Positions 46,366 to 59,751 of a stretch of 64,000 bases of DNA are shown in pieces. Made by a program: the position numbers and the translations under genes. The notes beneath the pieces are model-generated. The model had not been told where the DNA came from, searched no databases, and saw nothing but the letters and a program-made list of their open reading frames with translations. Origin of the DNA: Magallana gigas (Eukaryota); assembly GCF_963853765.1 (NCBI RefSeq), contig NC_088860.1, positions 40,176,001 through 40,240,000 on the forward strand, written 5' to 3'. Numbering within the stretch: position 1 is the stretch's first letter; each line of letters opens with the position of its first letter.

Positions 46366-47664
46366 TCACTGATTCACTGAATGTTGACATCTCACAAAAC
46401 CTTTTAAAGCTGCTTGAAACTTTTTGTCAAAGAGACTGTAGATGTATGGATTTGCTGCACTGCTTATCAAATACGTCGTCTTGAGCAAAAGGAACATGTT
46501 GACTTTAAGGTCACTCTCCTCTTTATGAACCCACCAGGAGTTGTCTTGAAGGTTGTTGTATACAATTATAGCTACGACAAGTGAAGGAATGTACGCAAGA
46601 ACCATGATAAGAAACATCACAATGAACATCACGTGAATGGAGATTGACTGGTGCCTTGTAACAGCTAATGGTAGGACCTCCTGGTGAGGGTTGTCATTTC
46701 TATTAAACCGAGATCTGCTTGTCAACATAAGTGTATTTTGAGGTTGTTCTTTCTGTTCGATTTCAGAGCTAGAGTCTAAGTTTCGTTTCTCGATACAATC
46801 CTTTTTACTATCAATACCCGTATTTTGAAACCCAATGTTGAATGACATGTGTTCGTTGCCCTTTATTTCTTCAGCAGTAGGATTTGTTCGTTCTGTACGT
46901 GTATGCTGTTTCAAATGGCTACCTAATTTAACAGCGCAGTTGATATCTTCGCTTGAATGATTTTCCTTGATTCTAGCTTGTTTAGAAGGATGCACAAACT
47001 TTGCAGAACGTCGAATTTTCGTGCAAATAACGTATGATATTTTCAAGTTAACGTACATCACATAAACAAATATACCTATAGTACCACAACCCACAATAAG
47101 GGAATGAATAACGTCAAATGTTGGGCTTGAATGTTTTGAAAATACGCAAACAGATCCTTGAATTGTACTGTTATATGTTGAAGGTTTTTGTAATAGAACA
47201 ACCCCGCTTGTCGCAAATACGGGACAGTTTAAAATGGCTGTGATCATAACAATGGTCTTCACGATGATCCATCTTTGTCTCTCTGTCAATGGTGTTTTTT
47301 CTATCTGACAAACCATTCGATACCTATCAAAGGCAATTGCAAACACTATAAAAATGGATACACTTACAATCCAACAAATTGTGAAGTATAGACCTTTGCA
47401 TATTATATCTGAAAAGAAAATGACATTTAGGCAGAGACGAATGAGTATACAGGCAGATAAAACAAGACTGGCAAGAAAATCCACAAAGGCTAGGATCGGA
47501 ATGAAGAACCGCCCTTTTCCAGAAATCATCTTTTTCCAGTAAATTACGAGAACAGTCGCATTGCCTATAACTCCAGTTATACAATACACTGAAATAATTG
47601 CAATAGTTGGTGTTAGAGTCCGGATTATTGATAGATTCCACGTTTCCAATCCAGCTGCCGCCAT
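46366..47664 (-). CDS. Intronless rhodopsin-family (class A) GPCR, peptide/CCK-receptor-like orphan
   Basis: Seven hydrophobic segments with GN in TM1, LAFVD in TM2, DRY, and NPYIY. ATG at 47664 follows an acceptor-like ttccag. Confidence 0.93.
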   Translation of the reverse strand: MAAAGLETWNLSIIRTLTPTIAIISVYCITGVIGNATVLVIYWKKMISGKGRFFIPILAFVDFLASLVLSACILIRLCLNVIFFSDIICKGLYFTICWIVSVSIFIVFAIAFDRYRMVCQIEKTPLTERQRWIIVKTIVMITAILNCPVFATSGVVLLQKPSTYNSTIQGSVCVFSKHSSPTFDVIHSLIVGCGTIGIFVYVMYVNLKISYVICTKIRRSAKFVHPSKQARIKENHSSEDINCAVKLGSHLKQHTRTERTNPTAEEIKGNEHMSFNIGFQNTGIDSKKDCIEKRNLDSSSEIEQKEQPQNTLMLTSRSRFNRNDNPHQEVLPLAVTRHQSISIHVMFIVMFLIMVLAYIPSLVVAIIVYNNLQDNSWWVHKEESDLKVNMFLLLKTTYLISSAANPYIYSLFDKKFQAALKGFVRCQHSVNQ

Positions 47665-49417
47665 CCTCTGGAAATTCAAAAGTAAAGCTTCAACACAAAA
47701 TAATTAAGCTTTAAATCGAAATCAATTTCCTTTTATTAAGTTTGTTGCAAATTAACACAGCACTTTATAGTAATTATGTTTTATTAAGTCATTTGTTTTA
47801 TCCTGTCTGTGCTCAGCACTAGAATTTAGACGATGGCACTGGCTTGGACATATATAACCAAATGGTAAAAGAACCCTCATAAAAATGACGCCTTATTCCC
47901 GCTATGGCAGAATGTCCGAAAATTTTTCTTTTTCATTTAAGGAAAACGAACAGCGTATTATTTCTTTATAAAGGAAACGGAGACCAACTGTCAACGTATA
48001 TTAACGGAAATCGACTGGTTTAAATTTCCCCTTAAAAAATTCAAACGTGAAAAATATTAAAATACAATTATTCTTTATTGATAATCAATTGGGATATTTA
48101 TAATATATGTTTACATTTTTACATGAAGCATGTAACTAGAGGAAATTCCAAGTCATATGCATGTCTTAAGATTTCTTAAGAATTCATAATAGAAAACCTA
48201 ATTTTACATACAATATTGAAAACAAAATAAGAACATTAATGTATATGTATATTCACTTCTCATTTAAGAAAATCATTTAATTTTATCATAAACATATTTG
48301 TGAGAAAAAAAATTAACTGTGATAGTAAAAAAAACCCCTTTTATTTCAGCAGTGCATAGAATGTTTATTTGCACACGGGTGTTTATCAGGATGAAACATA
48401 AATTGAGCTGTATCAATGTTAAGTGTACTAGAATCAAGGCACATACAAACAAGTTAATGACCTCCAGTGTAATTAATTCACAAGTTCACTACTGCTTAAG
48501 TTTTTCTTGCACACAAGCTTGGAAATATTCCATTTTTACCTAGTAACTTCCATTATCCAAGGAATATAGAAAACATACATGAAATTATTTTAACATGTTA
48601 TTTAGTTAGCTTCCGCGACAAAATATATAGTGCCCGAAACTGTGTGGAGTAAATTAATTTTTGTTAAGGAATAGATATATATATATAAGTTATTGTTTTT
48701 CAAAAGTACACATCAAATTGGTTATGTAAGATTGAAAGTTTTATTTAATCGTACAAAATATATATATATACTCAAAACAGGTGAAAACGTTTATTTTTGT
48801 GCTCATGGCGCATGGATTAGCAAAGTGTATTAATAGAACTTGAACGTCGCAGATTTCCAATGTAAACATAAGGTAAATATACACTGAATGTAAATATACA
48901 GAGGTGGAATAAATATCAGGGGTGGTTGGTGGGAAAGAAAATGGCAAAACTCAACTGTCTGCGATCAAATCCAAACAAACGACAAAGAAAATAGTCTGGA
49001 CACATTCGCAGGGGTGAATAAGTGTACATTGATCTTTTTCTGCATTAATATTAATATTCTTTTTTATCTTATCATTATTATAAGTTTAAGATAATAACTT
49101 GAATAGGCACCCTATATTTTCATTTAATGATTTTCCGTGCATATATATTAAAGAATTTGGTAGCTTTATAATAATCTTTTATGAGAATAAACAAGAAATT
49201 TTAACTTTATGTAACATTACCAACCGGTATATCTTTTTTATCACTATTTTATAGCCAAGCACAAATTAATGTCAAAAAAGTAATTAAATTGTACATGGTT
49301 GATACAAATGACATCATATCATAAAGTGACAATATATGTAGAGTTTATGTCATTTATTATACAAATAACACTTCAATCTTTATTATTTTTCTCTTTTTCT
49401 GAAGTTTGAGTTCATAC

Positions 49418-50599
49418 CTAACGTTTTAAACATCCGATCACGATAGCACGAAACTCTTTGTCAAAGAGACTATATATATAAGGATTTGCTGCACTGCTGA
49501 TTAGATACGATACTTGGAACGAAAAGAAAAGATTAATATCCATAGTATGTTCTTCAACATCGAACACCGAAAAGTTTTGTGTGTGGTCGTTGTATATCAT
49601 TAGAACAATTGTCAAGGAGGGAATATATGAAAGAAGCATGATGACAAACATCACGAAGAACATGACATGGATATAGAGTGACTGGTGTGTCCTTACAGTT
49701 TGTAGTAAATACTTTGGATAACACGTTTTATCCTTGTTTACTTGCAATCTACTCACAGATATATCAATGGGTTCAAGTTGCTCGATTGATTCATCTTCTG
49801 GGCGAGATTCCATTTGATGAGGGATGTCTCTTTCTAGATTATCATTTTCAGAGTTTCTGTCTGCAAATGGGCATTTCATGCATGCAGTAAAAAAATGTTT
49901 ATTTTTTGTTTTATTGTAACTGATAATGATATTATTTTCAGATCGTCGAAGCTTTGTGCAAATGACGTAAGCTATTCTTACATTGAAAAACAACACACAG
50001 ACAAACATACTAACGATTCCAATGATTACAACAAACGAGTGGATCACTTCAAATGTCGGATCTAGATGTTTTGAAATGGTACAGATGGATCCCTTTATTG
50101 AATTGTTGTATTTAGAAGGCAAAGGAACAAAAACAGTTCCACTTGTAACAAGAACTGGAATGTTTAAAATTCCGCTGAGAATAAGTATAGTCCACACAAT
50201 AGTCCATTTTTGTCTCTCTGATAGTGGTTGTCTATTTATTTGACAAATTATCCGATACCTATAATAAGCGATTGCAAACACCAAGAAAACTGAGGCATTA
50301 AAAATCCAACAAATGATGTGAAAGTAAATTTTGCACAGAACGTCTGAAAAGAAAACAACATTTCGGCATAGGTTTAGGAGGACACCAAAGGAACACACTA
50401 AACTGGCAAGAAGATCCACAAAGGCAAGGATCGGAATGAAAAAGCGCCCTTTTCCTGAAATTTTCTTCGTCTTGTAAACTATAAGCACCGTTGTATTTCC
50501 AATGGCACCGGTCATACAACAAATACTTATGAATACAATTGTGGGTATTAGAGTTTGAATCACTGACCAATGCCACCTGTTTAGGTCAATGCTATTCAT
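49418..50599 (-). CDS. Tandem paralogue of the class A GPCR
   Basis: Shares SGKGRFFIPILAFVD and YLISSAANPYIYSLFDK with the neighbouring receptor. The DRY motif reads YRY. Likely ATG at 50599; an upstream in-frame ATG exists at 50650. Confidence 0.92.
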   Translation of the reverse strand: MNSIDLNRWHWSVIQTLIPTIVFISICCMTGAIGNTTVLIVYKTKKISGKGRFFIPILAFVDLLASLVCSFGVLLNLCRNVVFFSDVLCKIYFHIICWIFNASVFLVFAIAYYRYRIICQINRQPLSERQKWTIVWTILILSGILNIPVLVTSGTVFVPLPSKYNNSIKGSICTISKHLDPTFEVIHSFVVIIGIVSMFVCVLFFNVRIAYVICTKLRRSENNIIISYNKTKNKHFFTACMKCPFADRNSENDNLERDIPHQMESRPEDESIEQLEPIDISVSRLQVNKDKTCYPKYLLQTVRTHQSLYIHVMFFVMFVIMLLSYIPSLTIVLMIYNDHTQNFSVFDVEEHTMDINLFFSFQVSYLISSAANPYIYSLFDKEFRAIVIGCLKR

Positions 50600-53176
50600 C
50601 TTGATTAACACAAAGCGTATGGCTGTAGTAGGAAGTTTTGTAGAGAACATGAAATATTCTGGAAAGGCCTCTCAATTTATATACTGAATTGAATGTAAAG
50701 TTTAAATTCCTATCATAAATATGCACTTGGACTTTAACTATAAGATATGTATTGTATTGGTATTGGTATTGTATTGATTTGAACATTGAAACCAAACTTT
50801 TAAGTTTTTTATGATAAGGTCTTCCTCAAAACCTTCAACCTCCTTTATAAAATCTTAATTTGAACAGGTTTATGAATTTTCCAAATTTGAAGTTCATGTG
50901 CGTTTTCACGTACCAAATTCCATAAGTATAATGCATGAATAATCGTAAAACAAATAAGTAATTAATATGAACAAATTTATTGTTATTATTTATATAATAC
51001 TCGTTTCTTGTTTGGCAAAAATGTCCGCTATATCCATTGTGCGGGCTCTATACAATTTTGAATGATTTAAAAATGCCGGAATGACCAGACATATAACATT
51101 AAAAAAACTGATAATAAAAATATAAATGTATATCTGAACGTTTTGTCTTCTTTTTTATGTCAGCAAGACTAAGGTTTTGTATGAGTTAATATAAAATTAA
51201 ACAAATAACTTGAGATCTGTATTCCAGAAATATTTTTTTAAATAAAGATTACTTCGAAAACTAGATTGCATGGTAAGTATTTTTTCACATATAACACACC
51301 TTTTTGGATTTTTGAAAAGGTAAATGTAGCTACTGATATGTATCGCATTATTTAGGTATAAAAAGGAATCATCTCATAAATTATCGATGGCTGTCCCAAA
51401 ATAAAATCGCAGCATAATGCAGCATTATAAGTCAATAGGATTGTTAACATCTACTTGCTACTGATAACACGCCGAAATATTGACATACACCTGTCCCAAT
51501 GGCACCTATTTGCATGTCACTATTTCCTTAATTTACGATTTTTATGTTGTATATGTATATTGATTTATAACATTATAAATGAATTATGTGACCTTAGTTA
51601 CTACAATTACACTGTAAAAGGTATATTATCCACATATTGAAAAAAAAGGATTTATAAATGTTAAAATACAAATTTTAAAAGCACACAAGGAAACATGGAC
51701 AATATAGACACGGGAAGAAGGAAATATTAACCAAGCAGATGACTTAGAAATTAACCTTTACTCCAAACTTGTTGAATTTAGGATAAATCATATCTGTCGT
51801 CAAGTAAAAGCGTTTAAAATTACGTTTTCTGAAAATTAAAAAATGTAGTACGGGCTTGGGATCAGAAAAAAACTTCCGTATGTTTGGTAAAAATTGCGGA
51901 CGGTGATATATATAATAGGTGTTTTTTTGAAATTATAGAGCTTTGATCCATATTCTGTAAGCGTATTTAATTTACATTTGGTTTTGGATTTTATTCAGCG
52001 TGTTTGGTGGCAGGTGGATTCCGCATAGCTACTAGTATATAACAAAATGTACATTGCTATATATAAATCCAATATATTTGTATTTAATACATTTGTTAGG
52101 TCCAATATCATGTTTGCTTAATATTGAACGTTTGCCATATTTTACATTTTAAAATTCTTGTTTAGTTGAAATATCTTTTAGTTATAACTTAATGTAAGAA
52201 ATATAAACTTTTATTAAGATGCAACACTTAAGAAAAAAGGAATACAAAACTACTTGCAGGAATCAATAACAATAACACAAAACTTTAATCATAAAATCAT
52301 CAGAAATTGTCAGGGCATTGTATAATGAAACAAAAACAATACCATAAAATGAAAACAGTCAGACACAAACTAAAATGGCAATGTATTAAAATATGAAATT
52401 ATAATTATAACATAATTGTCTGTAAATGATAGTTATATTTATTTTCCAATTTCTATTTCTTTGATGAGAATCAAAATTCATAAAATGATAAATGGTTATG
52501 AAATTTTCTTTTTCATTAAAGCGTACAAGTCAGATAAGATATGTCTTCGAAACTGCTTAACCAACAAATTAGTTTAGCATTAGTTATTTGGATATCTCCT
52601 GCATGATGATAACGTTTGAAATAACACAATTCACGAATTACCACAAATCAACAAAATTACGCACAAAAAAGTTTCGAAGCAAAATAGTAAACAATCAAAC
52701 ATTATGTTTTTTGTTTTATCATTTATGTAATAAATCAATGAATGTAAGCTTAAAAAACACAGCAAATCGTGGGGTTTTTTCAATCAGAAATCAAAGTTTT
52801 AAAAACATCCACAATTTTTTAATTAGGATTACGTGTTAGTCGCAAAATCCATTTTTTCTTGGGTTTATCTATGACGTTACTTGGAATTTGAATACAGTGT
52901 CACATCTTCATTTTTACATTAAATTTATGCTTTATTATTTCCACAGGAAACATAAATTTACATGCGAAACCGGTGATAACAATATTCAAAGCAGCTATTC
53001 TAAATTTTCACATTTTTCATATTTGCAATGAGGCATTTGATAAACATAGAATACTGATACATATTATTGTTTGTTTTTTCTTTATCAGTATTACACGTGC
53101 CGTCACAATCTGTTCCCGTTTTAATGTTCACACTATAAACATATAACATTTTGAGATGATGTAAGAAACATTAGTT

Positions 53177-53590
53177 CAAGAGGCTCAAAGACCACATTGT
53201 CCACTTTTAAAGAAATAATAGCCAAAACTCGGATTAAATCATATCCATGTTATCGAATACAACATAGTTATACAATAAAGTATGATAGGTCTTGTTCAGA
53301 ATTTTTTTCTCTCAATATCTTTTTATGTTAATTATTTTTTCTTTTCGAATTTAGTTTTTTGAAAGGAAGCTTTTTACCGATTATTTTTCTGTTTATTTTT
53401 AGAATGATAGATTCAACCCTCTCCTACAGTGTATCAACCCCTATCCCGGGGATTCATTTATAACAACAAGCTTAAATCAACACTACATAATGTATGTATC
53501 ATCATAATTTCAGAACTTTTCATGCCCAATGTTTTTTTTTTCTCTTTTTATCTCTATGAAAATATTTGATTCGCTATCCTTATCTGGTAC
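53177..53590 (+). mobile_element. Remnant of a Helentron/CvA(pearl)-like non-autonomous element with a satellite-like core
   Basis: Starts caagaggctcaaagaccacattg. Contains a degenerate monomer (ccctatcccggggattcat...aacaagcttaaatcaacactac). Family recognised from memory. Confidence 0.5.
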
Positions 53591-53599
53591 AATGACGAA

Positions 53600-53947
53600 G
53601 TGAAGTTTTGGCTCTTTATTTGAAGAAATCTAAATTCCGTGTACAAAGTGCACTCTTTCTATGCTTGGTTGAAATTTGTTTTTACAATATTTGGAACAGT
53701 ACGCAACAAGCTGGCAGCGATCACATCTTTTGAGGTTTTCGAAACTTCCGCAAGAAGCACAAGAATAAGGTGACTATTTTTGATTGTGAAGTTCTTCAGG
53801 AAAGCTCAAATAGACATTACATCGTCTTTTCGTTCATTGTTTCCGAGCTTTTGCACAGTTTTTCATGTGACTTTTGCTAATCTTTCATCTGACTTTTTAA
53901 GCTACAGTAGCTCACGATGTGACATTTTGAACATCTCGACATTTTTA
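53600..53947 (-). pseudogene. Decayed fragment with two MYND-type zinc fingers
   Basis: KMSRCSKCHIVSYCSLKSQMKD*QKSHEKLCK, with TAG at 53879-53877 at the conserved Trp. After a frameshift: YSCASCGSFENLKRCDRCQLVAYCSKYCK...(KH.KEC). Confidence 0.8.
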
Positions 53948-54502
53948 TGTAACGTGCAAGGGGGTCACTGCCTGTGATCCCCGCGGGCCCGTACCCGAGA
54001 TAGAATCGGATAGCCCTGATTGCTGCCAATATTTACAAGTGCAGGCTTCTATCACCGCTCCTGCACATATATAGGGACTCAACGTTACGCAGGCAGGGAT
54101 GACCGCACACCTACGCAACTCAACAGGTACCAACGTTAACGCAAGCAGGGATGACCGCACACTTGCACCAACAGCTCAACCTAACGCAAGCAGGGAGTGC
54201 CGCACACTTGCGCTAGAAAGGCCAGAACACCAGCAGGGATGACCACACACTAGTGCTCCGCCGCAACCACCACCAATACAAGCAGGGATGACCGCACACT
54301 TATATTAATGCGATACAGAGCAGGGATGACCGCACACTCTGTATCGTAGGTTATTTCACACGAAGATTAGAAAGAGCAGGGATGTCCACACTCAATCTAT
54401 ACGTACCTGTTCAAGTTTAACCCCAAACAGTCGTTTTTTGATCCGCAATTGACACTGTCCCTATATATGTGCCGGCCTAAAATAATTCATAGTATCTTAA
54501 CA
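53948..54502. mobile_element. 555-bp LTR-like element (TGTAAC...TTAACA) with an internal stem-loop array
   Basis: TG...CA ends and a GC-rich interior relative to the flanks. No TSD could be identified. Confidence 0.55.
54088..54399. repeat. Array of 7 interspaced repeats CAGGGATGACCGCACA, each closed by its own stem
   Basis: Loop copies at 54094, 54146, 54191, 54234, 54283, 54321 and 54377 (last copy 14 nt). Spacers are unique and the period is 38-56 bp. Confidence 0.95.
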
Positions 54503-57427
54503 CAGGAAATCAAAAATAAACAAACTAACTTAACATAACCCAAAAATACTTATACATAACAACTTATTTACATAAAATATTTATTATTGTACAAAAAGTA
54601 ATTAGCAAACTCATTGGTCATTATTGGGAACATTAATTAAATTATCAAAAAAATCAATAAATCAAAGGGGAATAACTCTAACCAAAAAAATACATGAATA
54701 AGCTGCCCGCTTCATTTACTTTTCCAACTCCACACGTTTTGCACTTTGTTGTCATTTTACCCTGAATAAAAAAAAGAAGGTTGGAATTATCTTTAAGTCC
54801 ATTAACTTAATATTTATTTGATGATTGCCATACCGAATTTGATTTTCTCTGGAATTGAGTGGACATGGTGCTACAAAAAATCTGAAAGGATCAGTTTTTA
54901 GATTTATGATCACAACAAAAAAAAAAAAGGACAAAAAATGAAATTCTGAGGATAAGAAAAAAGAGGTGTACATTTTACTTGTTTGCATTGTGACAATATC
55001 GTAATCGTATCTGCTATTTAAGGACAGTACAATATATATATAAATGATAAAGTTTTAATTTATTCTATCTATTCATATAAGGAACCAAACACAAAATAAG
55101 AATATTCTTGTCATAGATTTATTTACAAAAGCGTCATATTTTTAAGAATTTTTGAAAGGAAAATTTTAAAAAATTTCAATCAAATTAGCTAAAAAAGTTA
55201 ATCTATCACTGTATATTTAGGAACTATCTAAAATTTAAAACGGAAAAAGATAAATCACATAGCATCGCCAAACTTTGTGAAATGCAAGATAATAAAGGAG
55301 AAATAACGTAAGTAAGTAAGATTTCAAGAAAATTGGTATAATCCCAAAGTATATTAAAACTTAGATTGAGTATTGTAATGATATCATATTTACTAAATAA
55401 TGACCGGATATGTTGTTTACCAAACCAGTTCGTGCCAAGTGCTTAAAGCAGACATGAATTTATAAAAGCATTTGCAATTGGTCGCAATAATAGTTTCGAT
55501 CGCTTCTCTACTGCCACTGTGGTATATATACCGGTTGAGAAAGTTACGGTCGGTTGCTTTCCGACGAGGCATTTACGTTGCACGTACTTCTAAATGCATG
55601 AACCACTCATTTTTGTAAAATGTAGTACTAGAGAATAAATGAAATACAAAATATATAATTATTCTTTGAAAGGAATCTAAGGTATCCGTATTTTTTTGCA
55701 TAGACAGTTTTGTCTTACTTTGCATGCACATCGAACACGTGTGTCATTCATACAGAGTTCATAAGGTCTGCATCTTGTATTCTTTTAATACTAATCTAAT
55801 TCTTATATCAGATAGTTATATTTAAACAAACATAACAAGCATAATATCTTGAATTACTTTATTAACATGAAAGCATGTCATGTGTGATCTGGTTTGATTT
55901 AAATTGTTATATATCTCTCGTCAGCCTCTACACTCATAATATTGTTTCCACTTGGTACATGTACTCTGCTGCACACTCTGTACCTTTTATATACCATCTG
56001 TAAAATCTGAGTTTAAACAACTTCTGTACGTTAATCTAAACGTGTAATTTAAATATGTCGTCGATCTTTCGGAAACAACAACTGTTAGAAAAAGCTTCAT
56101 CGGATATTATAAACGTGAAATGGTTGCTTCGTATAATAGGACTCATAAGATACATGTACTAGTTGGTAGGTGTTTAGCATATCATTACGGTATACCACAC
56201 ATACGTAGGTCAAATGTTCATATATGTAACAAACTAAGTATTTTTTTTTTAATTAAAGAAATAAGTTATAATATCATGATAGTAACTATATCAATTGCAA
56301 TCCAAAGTATTATATACTACATTAATACTCTCGAAGCCGGAAAGCTGAGGCAGGTAAAATGGCCGGTTTGTATATGTATATAACATTGTATATCTTTACA
56401 ATTGGGAAGATTAAGTTTTATAACTAAAACAAAGCCTGATCTAGATTCTGAACTGAACAACGAGCATTATATCTGTCAAGATTTATGTAAACGTTCGCAC
56501 CTGGTATTTAAATAACCACGTGATCGTGACACGGGTAGAAACTGACTAGAAACAGTAAACAAATGGAATCCATAATATTGGATTGTGACATTTACAAGTC
56601 TGACAGTGACTCTTAGGTAAGCAGAAAATACTCACAATTTAGCTTAATGTTACAACAACTCTCTCCCAATGCAAACGTTTTGTACTGTTTGCTCATTGCT
56701 GACGATTTCAGCTCTTTGTAACAAACTTCTAAACCAAATTTTCAATAGTGTCGAAGTCGAATATAATAGTTCATTATACTTAACATATACTTTGTACATT
56801 TTAGCAACAAAACTAACTCTGAATTAAATTAAGAAAAATAAAACACATTACAGAACAACTGCTAACCTTAATTTCAGAAGATAGGTAGATTATCAATGAA
56901 TATGAAATGTGTATATTCTTCAACTATTCCCAAAAAAATCACGCTTAAAATAAAACAATGTAACAGATTTTAAATGATCCGGGTGTTTCAGTTTTGTGGT
57001 AATTGTATAGCTGTCTGACAAACTGTTCCTTACTGTAAGTGTTTTTCCTAAGTGTTCAGGAAGTAAAAAATGTTTATTTATAAATACAGAATGAGAACTG
57101 TTTACTTGAGTATGCCGTAAAATAATTCCGTATGAATTGTCTGGTCATTCTTAGATAGAGGAGGGGTAGGCAAAGGAGAGAAATAGGTACCGACAACACA
57201 TACCTATGTATAGATTGGTACAAAAGAATGGTTTTGATAAACTATGTAAACTTCAAAGCGAGCCGCTAGGGTGATTTTAAACAATTGTTTTTACTCATCT
57301 ACGTCAGAAATGCTACAACAATTGAATTGGATGCCTCTTGCAGATTACTTTATGTACAGAACAATTATTCATGTTTTTAAAGTTTTACATGATTTAACTT
57401 CAAATTATCTGGACTTTTTAAAAAATA

Positions 57428-58059: not shown

Positions 58060-59751
58060 ATGGAACAGCAGTATTTTGCCCGTGTTGTTGTTCGATGCAC
58101 CCTTTGTAAAACGTGTGTAGCCCCAATGTACTGTGAACAATGTCATTCAAATCTATGTGAAGATTGTGGGAAAAAGCATTCTTGTAAAATACATAATATT
58201 GTGCCACTAAAACAGTATTTAACCAGTCCGAACCAACTGAAGTGTAAACAACACTCAGATAAACAATGTCAAAATTACTGTGAACAATGTGATGTACCTA
58301 TGTGTGCACAGTGTGAATTGTCGAAAGAACATTTAGGACATAAGCAGGTTGGCTTCCTCAAAAAGTCTGAAACCAAAAAAGAAATTTTAGAGAGAGACTT
58401 GAAAGAGCTAGAACACATCATATATCCTAGATATCAGCATATCGTATCTGATATTAAAAGTCAGAAAGCAGATCTTTGTATTAATTCACAGAGGTTAATA
58501 ACGGATTTAGATAATCGAGGAAAAGTTTGGCACAAAGAAATAGACAGCATTATCAGTAATCTTAAATCTGAAATTTCGGAAACAAATTCGAAGCACATGG
58601 CTTTTCTTGATACACATGAAAATAAAACAACACCTACACTTGTTCAAATCAAGCAGGTAATTGCTGACATCAAGAAAATCCTCGATTCAAAAGATGTTAG
58701 TCTTTTCTCTGAGTACAAATCAAGGAATGCCGAATTCATCAGTTTGCCACATAAGGTCAACATGTCTTTACCATGCTTTACTTTTCCAAAAATAAACAGA
58801 GATCGGCTGGTTGAACAGTTTGGTTTTCTGTCAGCATTATCTTTTACAACGGAGGAACAAGACAACAGCATACCGACCCAGGGAGCCGAATCAATTCCCA
58901 AAGACGGGTCGCTGATAGGTGTACCCCAGGTCATTTCAGATATAGACACAAAAATAGGAAGTATATACAGCATGGCCTGTTTAAATGATTCGGAAATATG
59001 GACTCGTGGATTCGGCAACATAATGCATTTATACAATATAAACGGGGAACTAGTAAAAGAAATTCAAACAAAATCAGGAAAACATCCAAAAGACTTATCA
59101 CTGACAAGGTGTGGCAATTTAGTTTATACAGATGTTGATGATAGAAGTGTAAACATAGTGGAAAATGCACAGATACAGACAGTAATAAAACTGAGTGGCT
59201 GGATACCTTGCTGTGTTTGTTGTACCTCCTCTGATGACCTTTTGGTTTCCATGGAAATCGATGATGAAGATGAAGAAGATTTTGATTATGATGACGAATA
59301 TAACGACACGATAACAAAAGTTGTTCGTTACACAGGCTCCATTGAGAAACAAAGTATTCAGTTCAATGAAAAGGGAAAGCCCCTTTATTCATCTGGTGGT
59401 TCAATCGTGGAAAACAAGAACCTAGATATCTGTGTTGCTGATAATGTAGCCGGTGCAGTGGTAGTGGTTAATCAGGATGGGAAACTTCGGTTTTCGTACA
59501 AAGGCCCTCCCTCAACGGCCGAGAAATCATTCTATCCAAGCGGCATCGCCACAGACAGCCAAAGTCGTATCCTGACAGCAGACCCTTGGAACCACAATAT
59601 CCACATCCTGGATCAGGACGGACAGTTCCTCTGCTACATTACTAACTGTGGTTTAGAAGATCCATCTAGTTTATGTGTGGACACAAGCGACCATGTCTTT
59701 GTGGCTGGAATTTTCACACGTAAAGTGAAAAAAATCAGATATTACAACTAA
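58060..59751 (+). CDS. Second RING-less B-box/coiled-coil/NHL protein, 563 aa
   Basis: Single-exon ORF. B-boxes CTLCKTCVAPMYCEQCHSNLCEDC..H and CKQH..C..YCEQCDVPMCAQC..EH..H. NHL repeats FYPSGIATDSQSRILTAD. Probable 5'UTR intron 56617-58026. Confidence 0.93.
   Translation: MEQQYFARVVVRCTLCKTCVAPMYCEQCHSNLCEDCGKKHSCKIHNIVPLKQYLTSPNQLKCKQHSDKQCQNYCEQCDVPMCAQCELSKEHLGHKQVGFLKKSETKKEILERDLKELEHIIYPRYQHIVSDIKSQKADLCINSQRLITDLDNRGKVWHKEIDSIISNLKSEISETNSKHMAFLDTHENKTTPTLVQIKQVIADIKKILDSKDVSLFSEYKSRNAEFISLPHKVNMSLPCFTFPKINRDRLVEQFGFLSALSFTTEEQDNSIPTQGAESIPKDGSLIGVPQVISDIDTKIGSIYSMACLNDSEIWTRGFGNIMHLYNINGELVKEIQTKSGKHPKDLSLTRCGNLVYTDVDDRSVNIVENAQIQTVIKLSGWIPCCVCCTSSDDLLVSMEIDDEDEEDFDYDDEYNDTITKVVRYTGSIEKQSIQFNEKGKPLYSSGGSIVENKNLDICVADNVAGAVVVVNQDGKLRFSYKGPPSTAEKSFYPSGIATDSQSRILTADPWNHNIHILDQDGQFLCYITNCGLEDPSSLCVDTSDHVFVAGIFTRKVKKIRYYN

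What the first reader, a model, noticed from the sequence alone, without database searches (positions are those of the whole stretch)
54088..54399. Array of seven stem-loops with an invariant 16-nt loop on co-varying stems (CRISPR-like spacing, but an RNA/ssDNA structure array)
Seen: CAGGGATGACCGCACA recurs at 54094, 54146, 54191 (variant), 54234 (variant), 54283, 54321 and 54377 (14-nt variant). The flanks differ between copies, yet in every copy the left flank is complementary to the right: cgcagg/cctacg (5 of 6), gcaag/cttgc (5 of 5), ctaacgcaag/cttgcgctag (9 of 10), gaacaccag/ctagtgctc (7 of 9), aatacaag/cttatatt (7 of 8), cgatacagag/ctctgtatcg (10 of 10), tagaaagag/ctcaatcta (7 of 9). Simple tandem duplication does not produce different-but-paired stems, so this points to selection on structure. 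Inference: a multivalent protein-binding or packaging signal (MS2/psi-like), a processing signal or a ribozyme-like module of a non-autonomous mobile RNA. I do not recognise the loop as hammerhead, IRE or K-turn.
Basis: partly seen in the sequence, partly recalled or inferred. Interest (0 to 1): 0.9.

Follow-up and report, generated by a model that had tools for sequence, protein, structure and literature searches.

The report
RNA hairpin array in oyster solo LTR
The seven stem-loops are real and co-vary, but they belong to a stranded long terminal repeat (solo LTR) of an oyster retrotransposon.

Summary
Seven copies of the 16-nt core lie at 54094-54392, each between complementary arms. Covariation is strong: 95% of cells pair, 11 of 17 pairs carry double changes, and 0 of 500 shuffles do as well.

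The reading needs correcting:
- **Strand.** The structure belongs to the minus strand. There the "16-nt loop" is a bulged helix (tandem U.G/G.U, two bulges, three G-C pairs) under a 4-nt loop. Wobble-only cells number 30 on minus and 2 on plus. Stranded RNA reads are about 10:1 on one strand.
- **Context.** The array sits in a 767-bp solo LTR (53948-54714, minus). It has TG...CA ends and a 4-bp duplication (TTTA), and an empty-site allele exists. Elsewhere the same LTR is followed by a tRNA-primer-site-like stretch and a zinc-knuckle Gag gene.
- **Conservation.** A relative whose Gag is only 60% identical keeps the array and the long-range helix that closes it. Its lower stems and loops differ.
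- **Decay.** Old genomic copies decay neutrally.

Best reading: a multivalent cis-acting RNA module of an LTR retrotransposon. Its exact role (packaging, export or stability) is inferred, not shown.

This scan had already found the same array on other DNA of this genome (s1-361629, s1-382356). Rfam and the searched papers hold nothing like it.

The parts
53944..53947 (.). Target-site duplication TTTA (left copy)
   Evidence: The same 4 letters stand at 54715-54718. The empty-site allele joins 53943 to 54715 and keeps one TTTA.
53948..54714 (-). Solo LTR, 767 bp. On the minus (sense) strand it reads 5'-TGAAGCGG...GCACGTTACA-3'.
   Evidence: The ends are TG...CA. The same ends, with different flanks, occur in L006, L010, L011, L015/L017 and L016. 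In L006, L010 and L016 the element is followed by a PBS-like TGGTGGCAGCGGTG and a gag ORF. There is no second copy in the window.
54715..54718 (.). Target-site duplication TTTA (right copy)
54699..54711 (-). Small terminal hairpin AAGC-N5-GCTT at the sense 5' end of the LTR
   Evidence: Read directly. Kept in L016 as AAGCGGAAAGCTT.
54476..54698 (-). AT-rich 5' part of the LTR, the most variable segment
   Evidence: 87% identity to L006, against 96-100% elsewhere. GC is 27-30%.
54457..54475 (-). 5' arm (sense) of the long-range helix that closes the array
   Evidence: A 19-nt inverted repeat, 95% complementary, with 54060-54078. It is identical in L006. L016 has the equivalent helix, 25 nt and 84% complementary, with different outer and inner letters.
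54080..54404 (-). Array of seven RNA hairpins. Units in sense order 7 to 1: 54363-54404, 54307-54350, 54269-54312, 54220-54263, 54177-54220, 54132-54175, 54080-54123.
   Evidence: Per-unit RNA folds sum to -114.8 kcal/mol on minus and -64.2 on plus. Covariation is shown. The covariance model finds hits only here in the window.
54403..54411 (-). 5' arm (sense) of a nested 9-bp helix (GTACCTGTT / AACAGGTAC); its partner is 54122-54130. The helix encloses units 7-2.
   Evidence: Perfect inverted repeat I10. It is used in the minus-strand minimum-energy fold.
54122..54130 (-). 3' arm (sense) of the nested 9-bp helix
54060..54078 (-). 3' arm (sense) of the closing helix. It carries TATATA and is a likely promoter TATA box.
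   Evidence: In L016 only this arm keeps TATATA.
53948..54059 (-). Conserved 3' segment of the LTR (R/U5-like), including the hairpin GGGGTCAC-N5-GTGATCCCC at 53960-53982
   Evidence: About 82% DNA identity to L016 over window 54075-53943 (which also takes in the TATA-bearing arm and TSD letters), although Gag is only 60% identical. 97-100% identity to L006.

Best explanation
The region is a solo long terminal repeat of an oyster LTR retrotransposon, oriented on the minus strand (767 bp, 53948-54714), with a 4-bp target duplication. About half of the LTR is a structured RNA domain on the element's sense strand. The domain has seven tandem hairpins, and about ten in a distant relative.

Each hairpin has:
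- a lower stem of 9-12 base pairs that is free to change as long as it pairs;
- a conserved apical helix, 5'-AGUGUGCGG-loop-CCCUGCU-3' (A-U, G-C, tandem U.G/G.U, bulged U, G-C, bulged C/U, two G-C);
- a 4-5-nt loop of variable sequence.

A long-range helix of 19-25 bp closes the whole array.

Shown: the anatomy, the strand, the covariation, conservation of the array across a deep split in the family, and neutral decay of dead copies.

Inferred: the repeated apical helix is a docking site presented many times to one protein, most likely the element's own zinc-knuckle Gag (selective packaging) or a host export or stability factor. The downstream helix arm carries the TATA box, so the array probably lies in U3. 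It would then reach the genomic RNA through the 3' LTR.

The copy in this window is a dead relic with no evident host function.
For: - **LTR identity.** TG...CA ends, a TTTA duplication and an empty-site allele. The same element with the same ends sits next to TGGTGGCAGCGGTG and a gag ORF in L006, L010 and L016. The Gag homologues are from Magallana gigas and carry zf-CCHC at 26 bits, above the 20.8 cut-off.
- **Strand.** The whole-domain RNA fold is -167.7 kcal/mol (z -5.4) on minus and -116.4 (z -2.7) on plus. Per-unit folds sum to -114.8 against -64.2. The same mirror structure pairs 95.0% of cells on minus and 71.4% on plus. In lower stems, G.U against A.C counts are 11:2 in L006 and 13:3 in L016. 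Hairpin sense equals gag sense. Stranded polyA RNA has the first mate on + at 67-140 against 8-12 on -.
- **Selection in the element lineage.** The window and L006 differ at 14 places in the array. Eight are in spacers, four in unit 7 and two in the stems of units 1-6, and both of those stem changes are G.U to G-C switches. L016 keeps the apical helix, the array and the closing helix with compensatory changes.
- **Loop and bulge letters are the ones that vary**.
Against: - No experiment or read data fix the transcript's start and end, so the U3, R or U5 placement is inferred only from the TATA arm.
- The RNA library type could not be calibrated on a control gene.
- Most RNA reads come from other, chimeric family copies, not from intact elements.
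- No protein partner is identified.
- The loop has no G, which retroviral zinc knuckles usually prefer.
- The whole-array fold of L016 is no better than shuffles (z 0.0), although its individual hairpins fold.
- An array upstream of a TATA box is also the classical place for DNA enhancer repeats.
- No full-length element with two LTRs and a reverse transcriptase could be fetched.
Confidence: 0.6

Rival explanations
1. DNA-level enhancer. The conserved 18-20-bp core is a transcription-factor site repeated seven times in U3, upstream of the LTR's TATA box, like the tandem enhancer repeats of retroviral LTRs. The RNA structure would be incidental.
For: The array lies directly upstream of the conserved TATA-bearing arm. 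Tandem U3 repeats with a transcriptional role are well known (PMC3601003). The core sequence itself is conserved, not only its pairing.
Against: A factor site needs no complementary flanks, yet every unit has its own paired arms with double changes. The wobble asymmetry of 30 to 2 has no meaning in duplex DNA. The upstream arm of the closing helix co-varies with the TATA arm in L016. The two roles are not exclusive.
Confidence: 0.15
2. Small-RNA source or silencing trigger. The 15-17-bp hairpins are cut into small RNAs, or they act as a decoy for the host's RNA-silencing machinery.
For: Structured LTR regions correlate with small RNAs in other genomes (abstract of PMC10760457). The transcripts exist and are strand-biased.
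Against: The stems are shorter than animal Dicer or Drosha substrates usually are. The conserved part is the apex, not an arm that could give a mature small RNA. Selection within the element lineage for a self-silencing trigger is unlikely. No small-RNA data were available.
Confidence: 0.08
3. Single-stranded DNA structure.
For: G.T is the least harmful DNA mismatch, so a sense-strand bias could also arise in single-stranded DNA. Most genomic copies sit in a chimeric, non-LTR context.
Against: With DNA energy parameters the hairpins are weak on both strands (sums -37.3 and -28.0 kcal/mol). The invariant tandem G.U is a stable RNA motif but a poor DNA one. The array is conserved in true LTR contexts next to gag in a distant relative, where no rolling-circle carrier is involved.
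Confidence: 0.07
4. No function. Tandem duplication plus palindrome-correcting template switching made paired arms without selection.
For: Units 1-3 are plain tandem duplicates. Copy number varies between family members by unit-sized deletions (joints). Dead copies decay neutrally.
Against: Template switching makes perfect Watson-Crick palindromes, not a 24:5 excess of sense-strand wobbles in two lineages. It does not explain why the apical helix and the closing helix persist at 60% Gag identity. It does not explain why differences between young copies avoid the stems.
Confidence: 0.05

Closest known systems
Repetitive structural motifs that act as packaging signals in RNA viruses (coronavirus RSMs, abstract of PMC8206606; MS2-type coat-protein hairpins)
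   Same: Short structured RNA units are repeated in tandem. Each presents the same small bulged helix while the supporting stems vary, which suggests multivalent binding of a capsid or nucleocapsid protein.
   Different: The sequence motif is different. The bulged A and loop adenines that define the MS2 operator are absent. The host is an LTR retrotransposon, not an RNA virus. The likely location is U3, not the 5' leader. No binding has been shown.
Structured export or processing elements in or near retroviral 3' LTRs (HTLV RxRE, HERV-K RcRE, HIV RRE, MPMV CTE, MusD transport element); comparison from my own knowledge
   Same: A domain of several hundred nucleotides, closed by a long-range helix, with several stem-loops radiating from it. 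It lies in or next to the 3' LTR part of the genomic RNA and would bind several copies of one protein.
   Different: Those domains consist of unlike stem-loops, not seven near-identical apical motifs. There is no sequence or Rfam similarity. No Rev/Rex-like gene was seen.
Tandem enhancer repeats in U3 of retroviral and retrotransposon LTRs (PMC3601003)
   Same: Tandem repeats of about 45 bp, upstream of the LTR TATA box, variable in number between copies.
   Different: Enhancer repeats are direct repeats of whole units. Here only the core is repeated and each unit has its own complementary arms with strand-specific wobble pairs.
Central tandem repeats of oyster Helentron-derived elements (Cg_HINE, PMC7492417)
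   Same: A high-copy, dispersed oyster repeat with an internal tandem array bracketed by inverted repeats. The insertion site is T-rich.
   Different: Cg_HINE monomers are 140-180 bp, and those elements have no target duplication. This copy has TG...CA ends and a TTTA duplication. None of its terminal or inverted-repeat strings occur in that paper's supplementary files.

Membership tests
LTR of an LTR retrotransposon (solo LTR) | Short inverted termini 5'-TG...CA-3' | tested here: met
   Sense strand TGAAGCGG...CGTTACA. The 3' end fits YNYAACA at 6 of 7 positions (consensus from PMC3601003). The same ends occur in six other copies.
LTR of an LTR retrotransposon (solo LTR) | Target-site duplication of 4-6 bp and a matching empty site | tested here: met
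   TTTA at 53944-53947 and 54715-54718. Contigs of two runs join 53943 to 54715 and skip 771 nt.
LTR of an LTR retrotransposon (solo LTR) | In full elements the LTR is followed by a tRNA primer-binding site and gag | tested here: met
   L006, L010 and L016 read ...GTTACA TAAAATT TGGTGGCAGCGGTG, then ATG and a Gag-like ORF. Homologues carry zf-CCHC. The matching tRNA was not identified; there is no tRNA gene in the window.
LTR of an LTR retrotransposon (solo LTR) | Two LTRs flanking gag-pol with reverse transcriptase and integrase | not testable with these tools
   All fetched contigs are 4.4 kb or shorter and stop within or just after gag.
Ty3/gypsy (Metaviridae) superfamily | Ty3-type capsid and the pol domain order PR-RT-RH-IN | tested here: inconclusive
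   Only sub-threshold Ty3_capsid (15.2 bits) and Retrotrans_gag (15.1 bits) hits on P0049. No PDB sequence match. No pol was seen.
Helentron-derived non-autonomous element (HINE) | Insertion at TT without target duplication | tested here: not met
   The T-rich site is explained by a 4-bp TTTA duplication. The L006 copy is flanked by G and T, not T and T.
Helentron-derived non-autonomous element (HINE) | Subterminal inverted repeats of 11-15 bp, 2-4 nt from the 5' end and 38-60 nt from the 3' end, plus a 3' palindrome | tested here: not met
   The only long inverted repeat lies 112 and 239 nt from the ends. The terminal 9-mer match lies 138 nt from the other end. Criteria are from PMC4067079. 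This concerns the window's copy only. The chimeric majority subfamily (L008, L009) was not testable.
Any Rfam family (hammerhead and other ribozymes, IRE, K-turn snoRNAs, miRNA precursors) | Covariance-model match | tested here: not met
   Nothing at E up to 10 except two chance-level hits (E 4.1 and 8.7), neither within the seven core motifs.
MS2/PP7-type coat-protein operator | Bulged adenine and the fixed loop adenines required for coat binding (from my own knowledge) | tested here: not met
   The bulges are U and C/U. The loop is UCAU and varies (CACU, CGCU, UAUAU, AUAU). Only the overall shape is similar.
CRISPR array | Identical repeats separated by unique spacers of similar length, in a prokaryote | tested here: not met
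   The repeats differ in their arms, the spacers are 0-12 nt, and the host is an oyster genome.

The most novel reading that the evidence does not exclude
The apical helix (invariant tandem U.G/G.U plus two bulges on a G-C clamp), presented 7-10 times inside a domain closed by a helix, could be a previously undescribed kind of multivalent recognition module. A mollusc LTR retrotransposon family would use it to select its own RNA for packaging or export. The module was later scattered in thousands of copies through oyster genomes, where some copies lie inside host transcripts and gene models and could have been put to host use.
Probability: 0.3. Interest if true: 0.7.

Novelty: new variant of a known kind. 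Interest (0 to 1): 0.5.

Why it matters
Cis-acting RNA signals of LTR retrotransposons are known in detail only for a few yeast, fly and vertebrate elements. Almost nothing is known for molluscs, whose genomes are full of active transposons. Here one short RNA motif is repeated many times, with clear covariation, strand-specific wobble pairs and conservation across a deep split in the family. That makes it a ready-made system for asking how a retrotransposon marks its own RNA. It also gives an annotation rule: this very abundant oyster repeat is LTR-derived and should be read on the gag-sense strand. For the host locus itself nothing special follows. The copy is a polymorphic dead solo LTR between receptor genes.

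Tried and rejected
- **MITE bounded by the 19-nt inverted repeat.** Rejected: the true insertion is 771 bp including its duplication, and the repeat is internal.
- **HINE/Helentron for this copy.** I held this for a while because of the T-rich site and the terminal hairpins. Rejected once the TG...CA ends, the TTTA duplication and the adjacent PBS and gag were seen.
- **DNA pattern scans.** Scans of viral and metagenome contigs for the core gave nothing or only single chance hits in GC-rich bacterial contigs, L001-L005.
- **What worked instead.** I searched the protein collections with spurious ORFs translated across the array, then fetched their contigs.
- **Literature search for the core sequence.** No paper holds it.
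- **Cg_HINE supplementary files.** None of our strings occur there.
- **Pfam on Gag fragments of L006 and L010.** No hits, because the fragments are too short or broken.
- **P0005.** The best representative hit is a receptor tyrosine-phosphatase gene model that merely contains a piece of the array. It and P0041 are not on record for contigs.
- **ADAR editing as the cause of the wobbles.** The RNA reads show no A>G excess.
- **tRNA matching the primer site.** There is none in the window.

Full report
**1. The observation**

The 16-nt core occurs seven times between 54094 and 54392 and nowhere else in the window. The chance expectation is 0.12 matches, and no shuffle reaches seven. Tandem Repeats Finder sees only the first three units as a 45-bp repeat. 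The other units share just the core. The region is a GC island of 52-54% in DNA of 27-30% GC.

**2. The strand**

- Folded as RNA, the domain 54060-54480 gives -116.4 kcal/mol (z -2.7) on the plus strand and -167.7 (z -5.4) on the minus strand. All seven hairpins and a closing helix form on the minus strand.
- Unit by unit, the RNA energies sum to -64.2 (plus) and -114.8 (minus). With DNA parameters both strands are weak, at -28.0 and -37.3.
It pairs as A-U, G-C, U.G, G.U, bulged U, G-C, bulged C, G-C, G-C around the loop UCAU. The lower stems extend to 9-12 pairs through G.U pairs, which are C.A mismatches on the plus strand.
- Counted on an alignment of the seven units, the minus-strand structure pairs 95.0% of cells. 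Eleven of 17 pairs change on both sides, and the covariation score is 0.675 against 0.208 for shuffles (0 of 500). Slid partners pair 41-52%.
- The mirror structure on the plus strand pairs only 71.4%. Thirty cells pair only on minus and two pair only on plus.
- All core differences among the seven units fall in the four loop letters or the bulged C.

**3. The element**

- Laying public reads on 53300-55300 showed three things.
  - Contigs from two runs join 53943 directly to 54715, so an allele lacks 771 nt.
  - The stretch from about 53950 to 54700 is extremely abundant. 3,926 contigs of one run were laid, and the summed depth is thousands of times that of the flanks.
  - Raw stranded polyA RNA has the first mate on the + strand about ten times more often than on the - strand. 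In the usual library type that means minus-strand RNA.
- The stretch is held by many oyster runs and by RNA of a second species label.
- The collections have no oyster DNA search, so I translated spurious ORFs across the array and searched the protein collections. I then fetched the contigs that encode the hits.
- L006 carries the whole element at 93% identity, with exactly the same ends and unrelated upstream DNA.
- L010, L011, L015/L017 and L016 share the end ...TTGCACGTTACA, mostly with different flanks.
- Read on the minus strand, the element is 5'-TG...CA-3' and 767 bp long, with TTTA on both sides. The empty allele keeps one TTTA.
- In L006, L010 and L016 the element is followed by TAAAATT, then TGGTGGCAGCGGTG (starting with the TGG expected of a tRNA primer site), then an ORF. 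The ORF's homologues from Magallana gigas are 95% identical and carry a CCHC zinc knuckle above Pfam's cut-off.
- A more complete relative, P0049, shows the usual Gag capsid pattern, with only sub-threshold Ty3_capsid and Retrotrans_gag hits.
- The window has neither a PBS, nor gag, nor a second LTR copy. The window's copy is therefore a solo LTR. The hairpin sense strand is the gag sense strand.
- The features that define a Helentron-derived element (no duplication; subterminal repeats at set distances) are not met by this copy.

**4. Conservation and selection**

- L016 comes from a different sample, and its Gag is only 60% identical. Even so, its LTR (620-1585) begins TGAAGCGGAAAGCTT and ends GCACGTTACA.
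- The covariance model built from the window's seven units finds nine matches (E below 0.05) between 981 and 1360, all on the gag-sense strand.
- The L016 units keep GUGUGCGG...CCCUGC. Their loops differ (CGCU, UAUAU, CGUU, AUAU; also CACU in a further unit at 1186-1225, read directly), and so do their lower stems.
- Seven L006 units plus seven L016 units pair at 92.3%, with 48 double-change cells.
- In lower stems, G.U outnumbers A.C by 11:2 in L006 and 13:3 in L016.
- L016 also has a 25-nt, 84% complementary helix bracketing its array. It is homologous to the window's 19-nt inverted repeat, but its outer and inner letters differ (for example CAC/GTG against CGC/GCG).
- Only the downstream arm keeps TATATA in L016. 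The stretch from that arm to the LTR end (window 54075-53943) is about 82% identical between the two.
- Between the young copies (window and L006), the array differs at 14 places. Eight are in spacers, four in unit 7 and two in the stems of units 1-6. Both stem changes are G.U to G-C switches. The AT-rich part is only 87% identical.
- Older copies (72-83% identity) change at similar rates in stems, cores and spacers, and most single stem changes break pairs.
- The constraint therefore acted in the propagating element lineage, not on inserted copies.

**5. Family structure**

- Depth over the LTR-specific ends is about a twentieth of that over the array.
- Most reads, and the contigs L008 and L009, leave the LTR at window 54006. 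They continue into a common unrelated sequence (GTTCCAAGG...GGATTTT...).
- The bulk of the copies are therefore a chimeric unit that carries part of the LTR.
I could confirm the LTR origin but could not test the carrier.
- Unit-sized deletions and duplications are common among copies (joints).

**6. Mechanism**

Shown:
- a sense-strand RNA domain of repeated hairpins, closed by a long-range helix;
- conservation with covariation in an LTR retrotransposon family;
- transcription with a strong strand bias.

Inferred:
- The invariant tandem G.U with its two bulges is a sequence- and shape-specific docking site, presented many times. The lower stems serve only as a scaffold.
- The likeliest partner is the element's zinc-knuckle Gag, for selective packaging. 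The next likeliest is an export or stability factor.
- Because the TATA-bearing arm lies downstream of the array, the array is probably in U3. It would then be present once per genomic RNA, near its 3' end. In retroviruses, structured export and processing elements sit in that region.

Rivals are a DNA enhancer, a small-RNA source, a single-stranded DNA structure, and a mutational by-product. They are set out with their evidence in the Rival explanations section. None explains the strand-specific wobbles together with the conserved closing helix.

**7. Comparison and novelty**

- Rfam has no match, and no searched paper contains the core sequence.
- The nearest concepts are repeated structural packaging motifs of RNA viruses (abstract of PMC8206606), multi-stem-loop response elements of retroviral 3' LTRs (from my own knowledge), and U3 tandem enhancer repeats (PMC3601003). 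The thing resembles each in part and is a member of none.
- I rate it a new variant of a known kind: a cis-acting structured RNA of a retroelement.
- The same array had already been noted twice by this scan on other DNA of this genome, which neither raises nor lowers the score.
- For this locus the finding is ordinary: a polymorphic solo LTR in an intergenic stretch between receptor genes and a TRIM-like gene.

**Constraints observed**

- The 158 N in the window were left untouched.

Noticed in passing
window 46366-47679 (-) and 49418-50650 (-): Two intronless ORFs of 437 and 410 aa, both rhodopsin-family 7TM receptors (7tm_1, E 4e-18 and 1e-16). They look like a tandem pair of GPCR genes.
   Followed up: partly
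window 58060-59751 (+): A 563-aa ORF with B-box zinc finger and NHL repeat hits: a TRIM-NHL-like gene in a single exon.
   Followed up: partly
window 53943/54715: Presence/absence polymorphism. Contigs of two public runs carry the empty site, so the solo LTR is not fixed in oysters.
   Followed up: yes
P0005 (989 aa): A receptor-type protein tyrosine phosphatase gene model contains 38 residues translated from the hairpin array at 89% identity. This is either an exonised copy or an annotation artefact.
   Followed up: partly
L008:205-470: The majority subfamily continues, after the LTR piece, into a foldback of about 265 bp with arms of about 45 bp (CCAAGG...GGATCTACATGTA and its complement). 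This looks like a MITE or part of the carrier element.
   Followed up: no
L016:1348-1440: A second, unrelated tandem repeat (about 3 copies of GTTCTTGTGGAAGTGCG...) lies between the hairpin array and the TATA arm in the distant relative. It is absent from the window's LTR.
   Followed up: no
L016:430-500: A tRNA-like stretch (GGATTCGAACC...) just upstream of that LTR, probably a tRNA-derived SINE. There is also a direct repeat, 4-106 against 322-424.
   Followed up: no
L012-L014, L015, L017-L019: Identical contigs with old array fragments recur in many runs of one study (SRR148650xx). L017 continues into what looks like a lectin-type coding exon. Old copies are therefore embedded in host transcripts or introns.
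   Followed up: no
window, whole: The window holds 158 N. I did not locate or touch them. There is no tRNA gene in the 64 kb.
   Followed up: no
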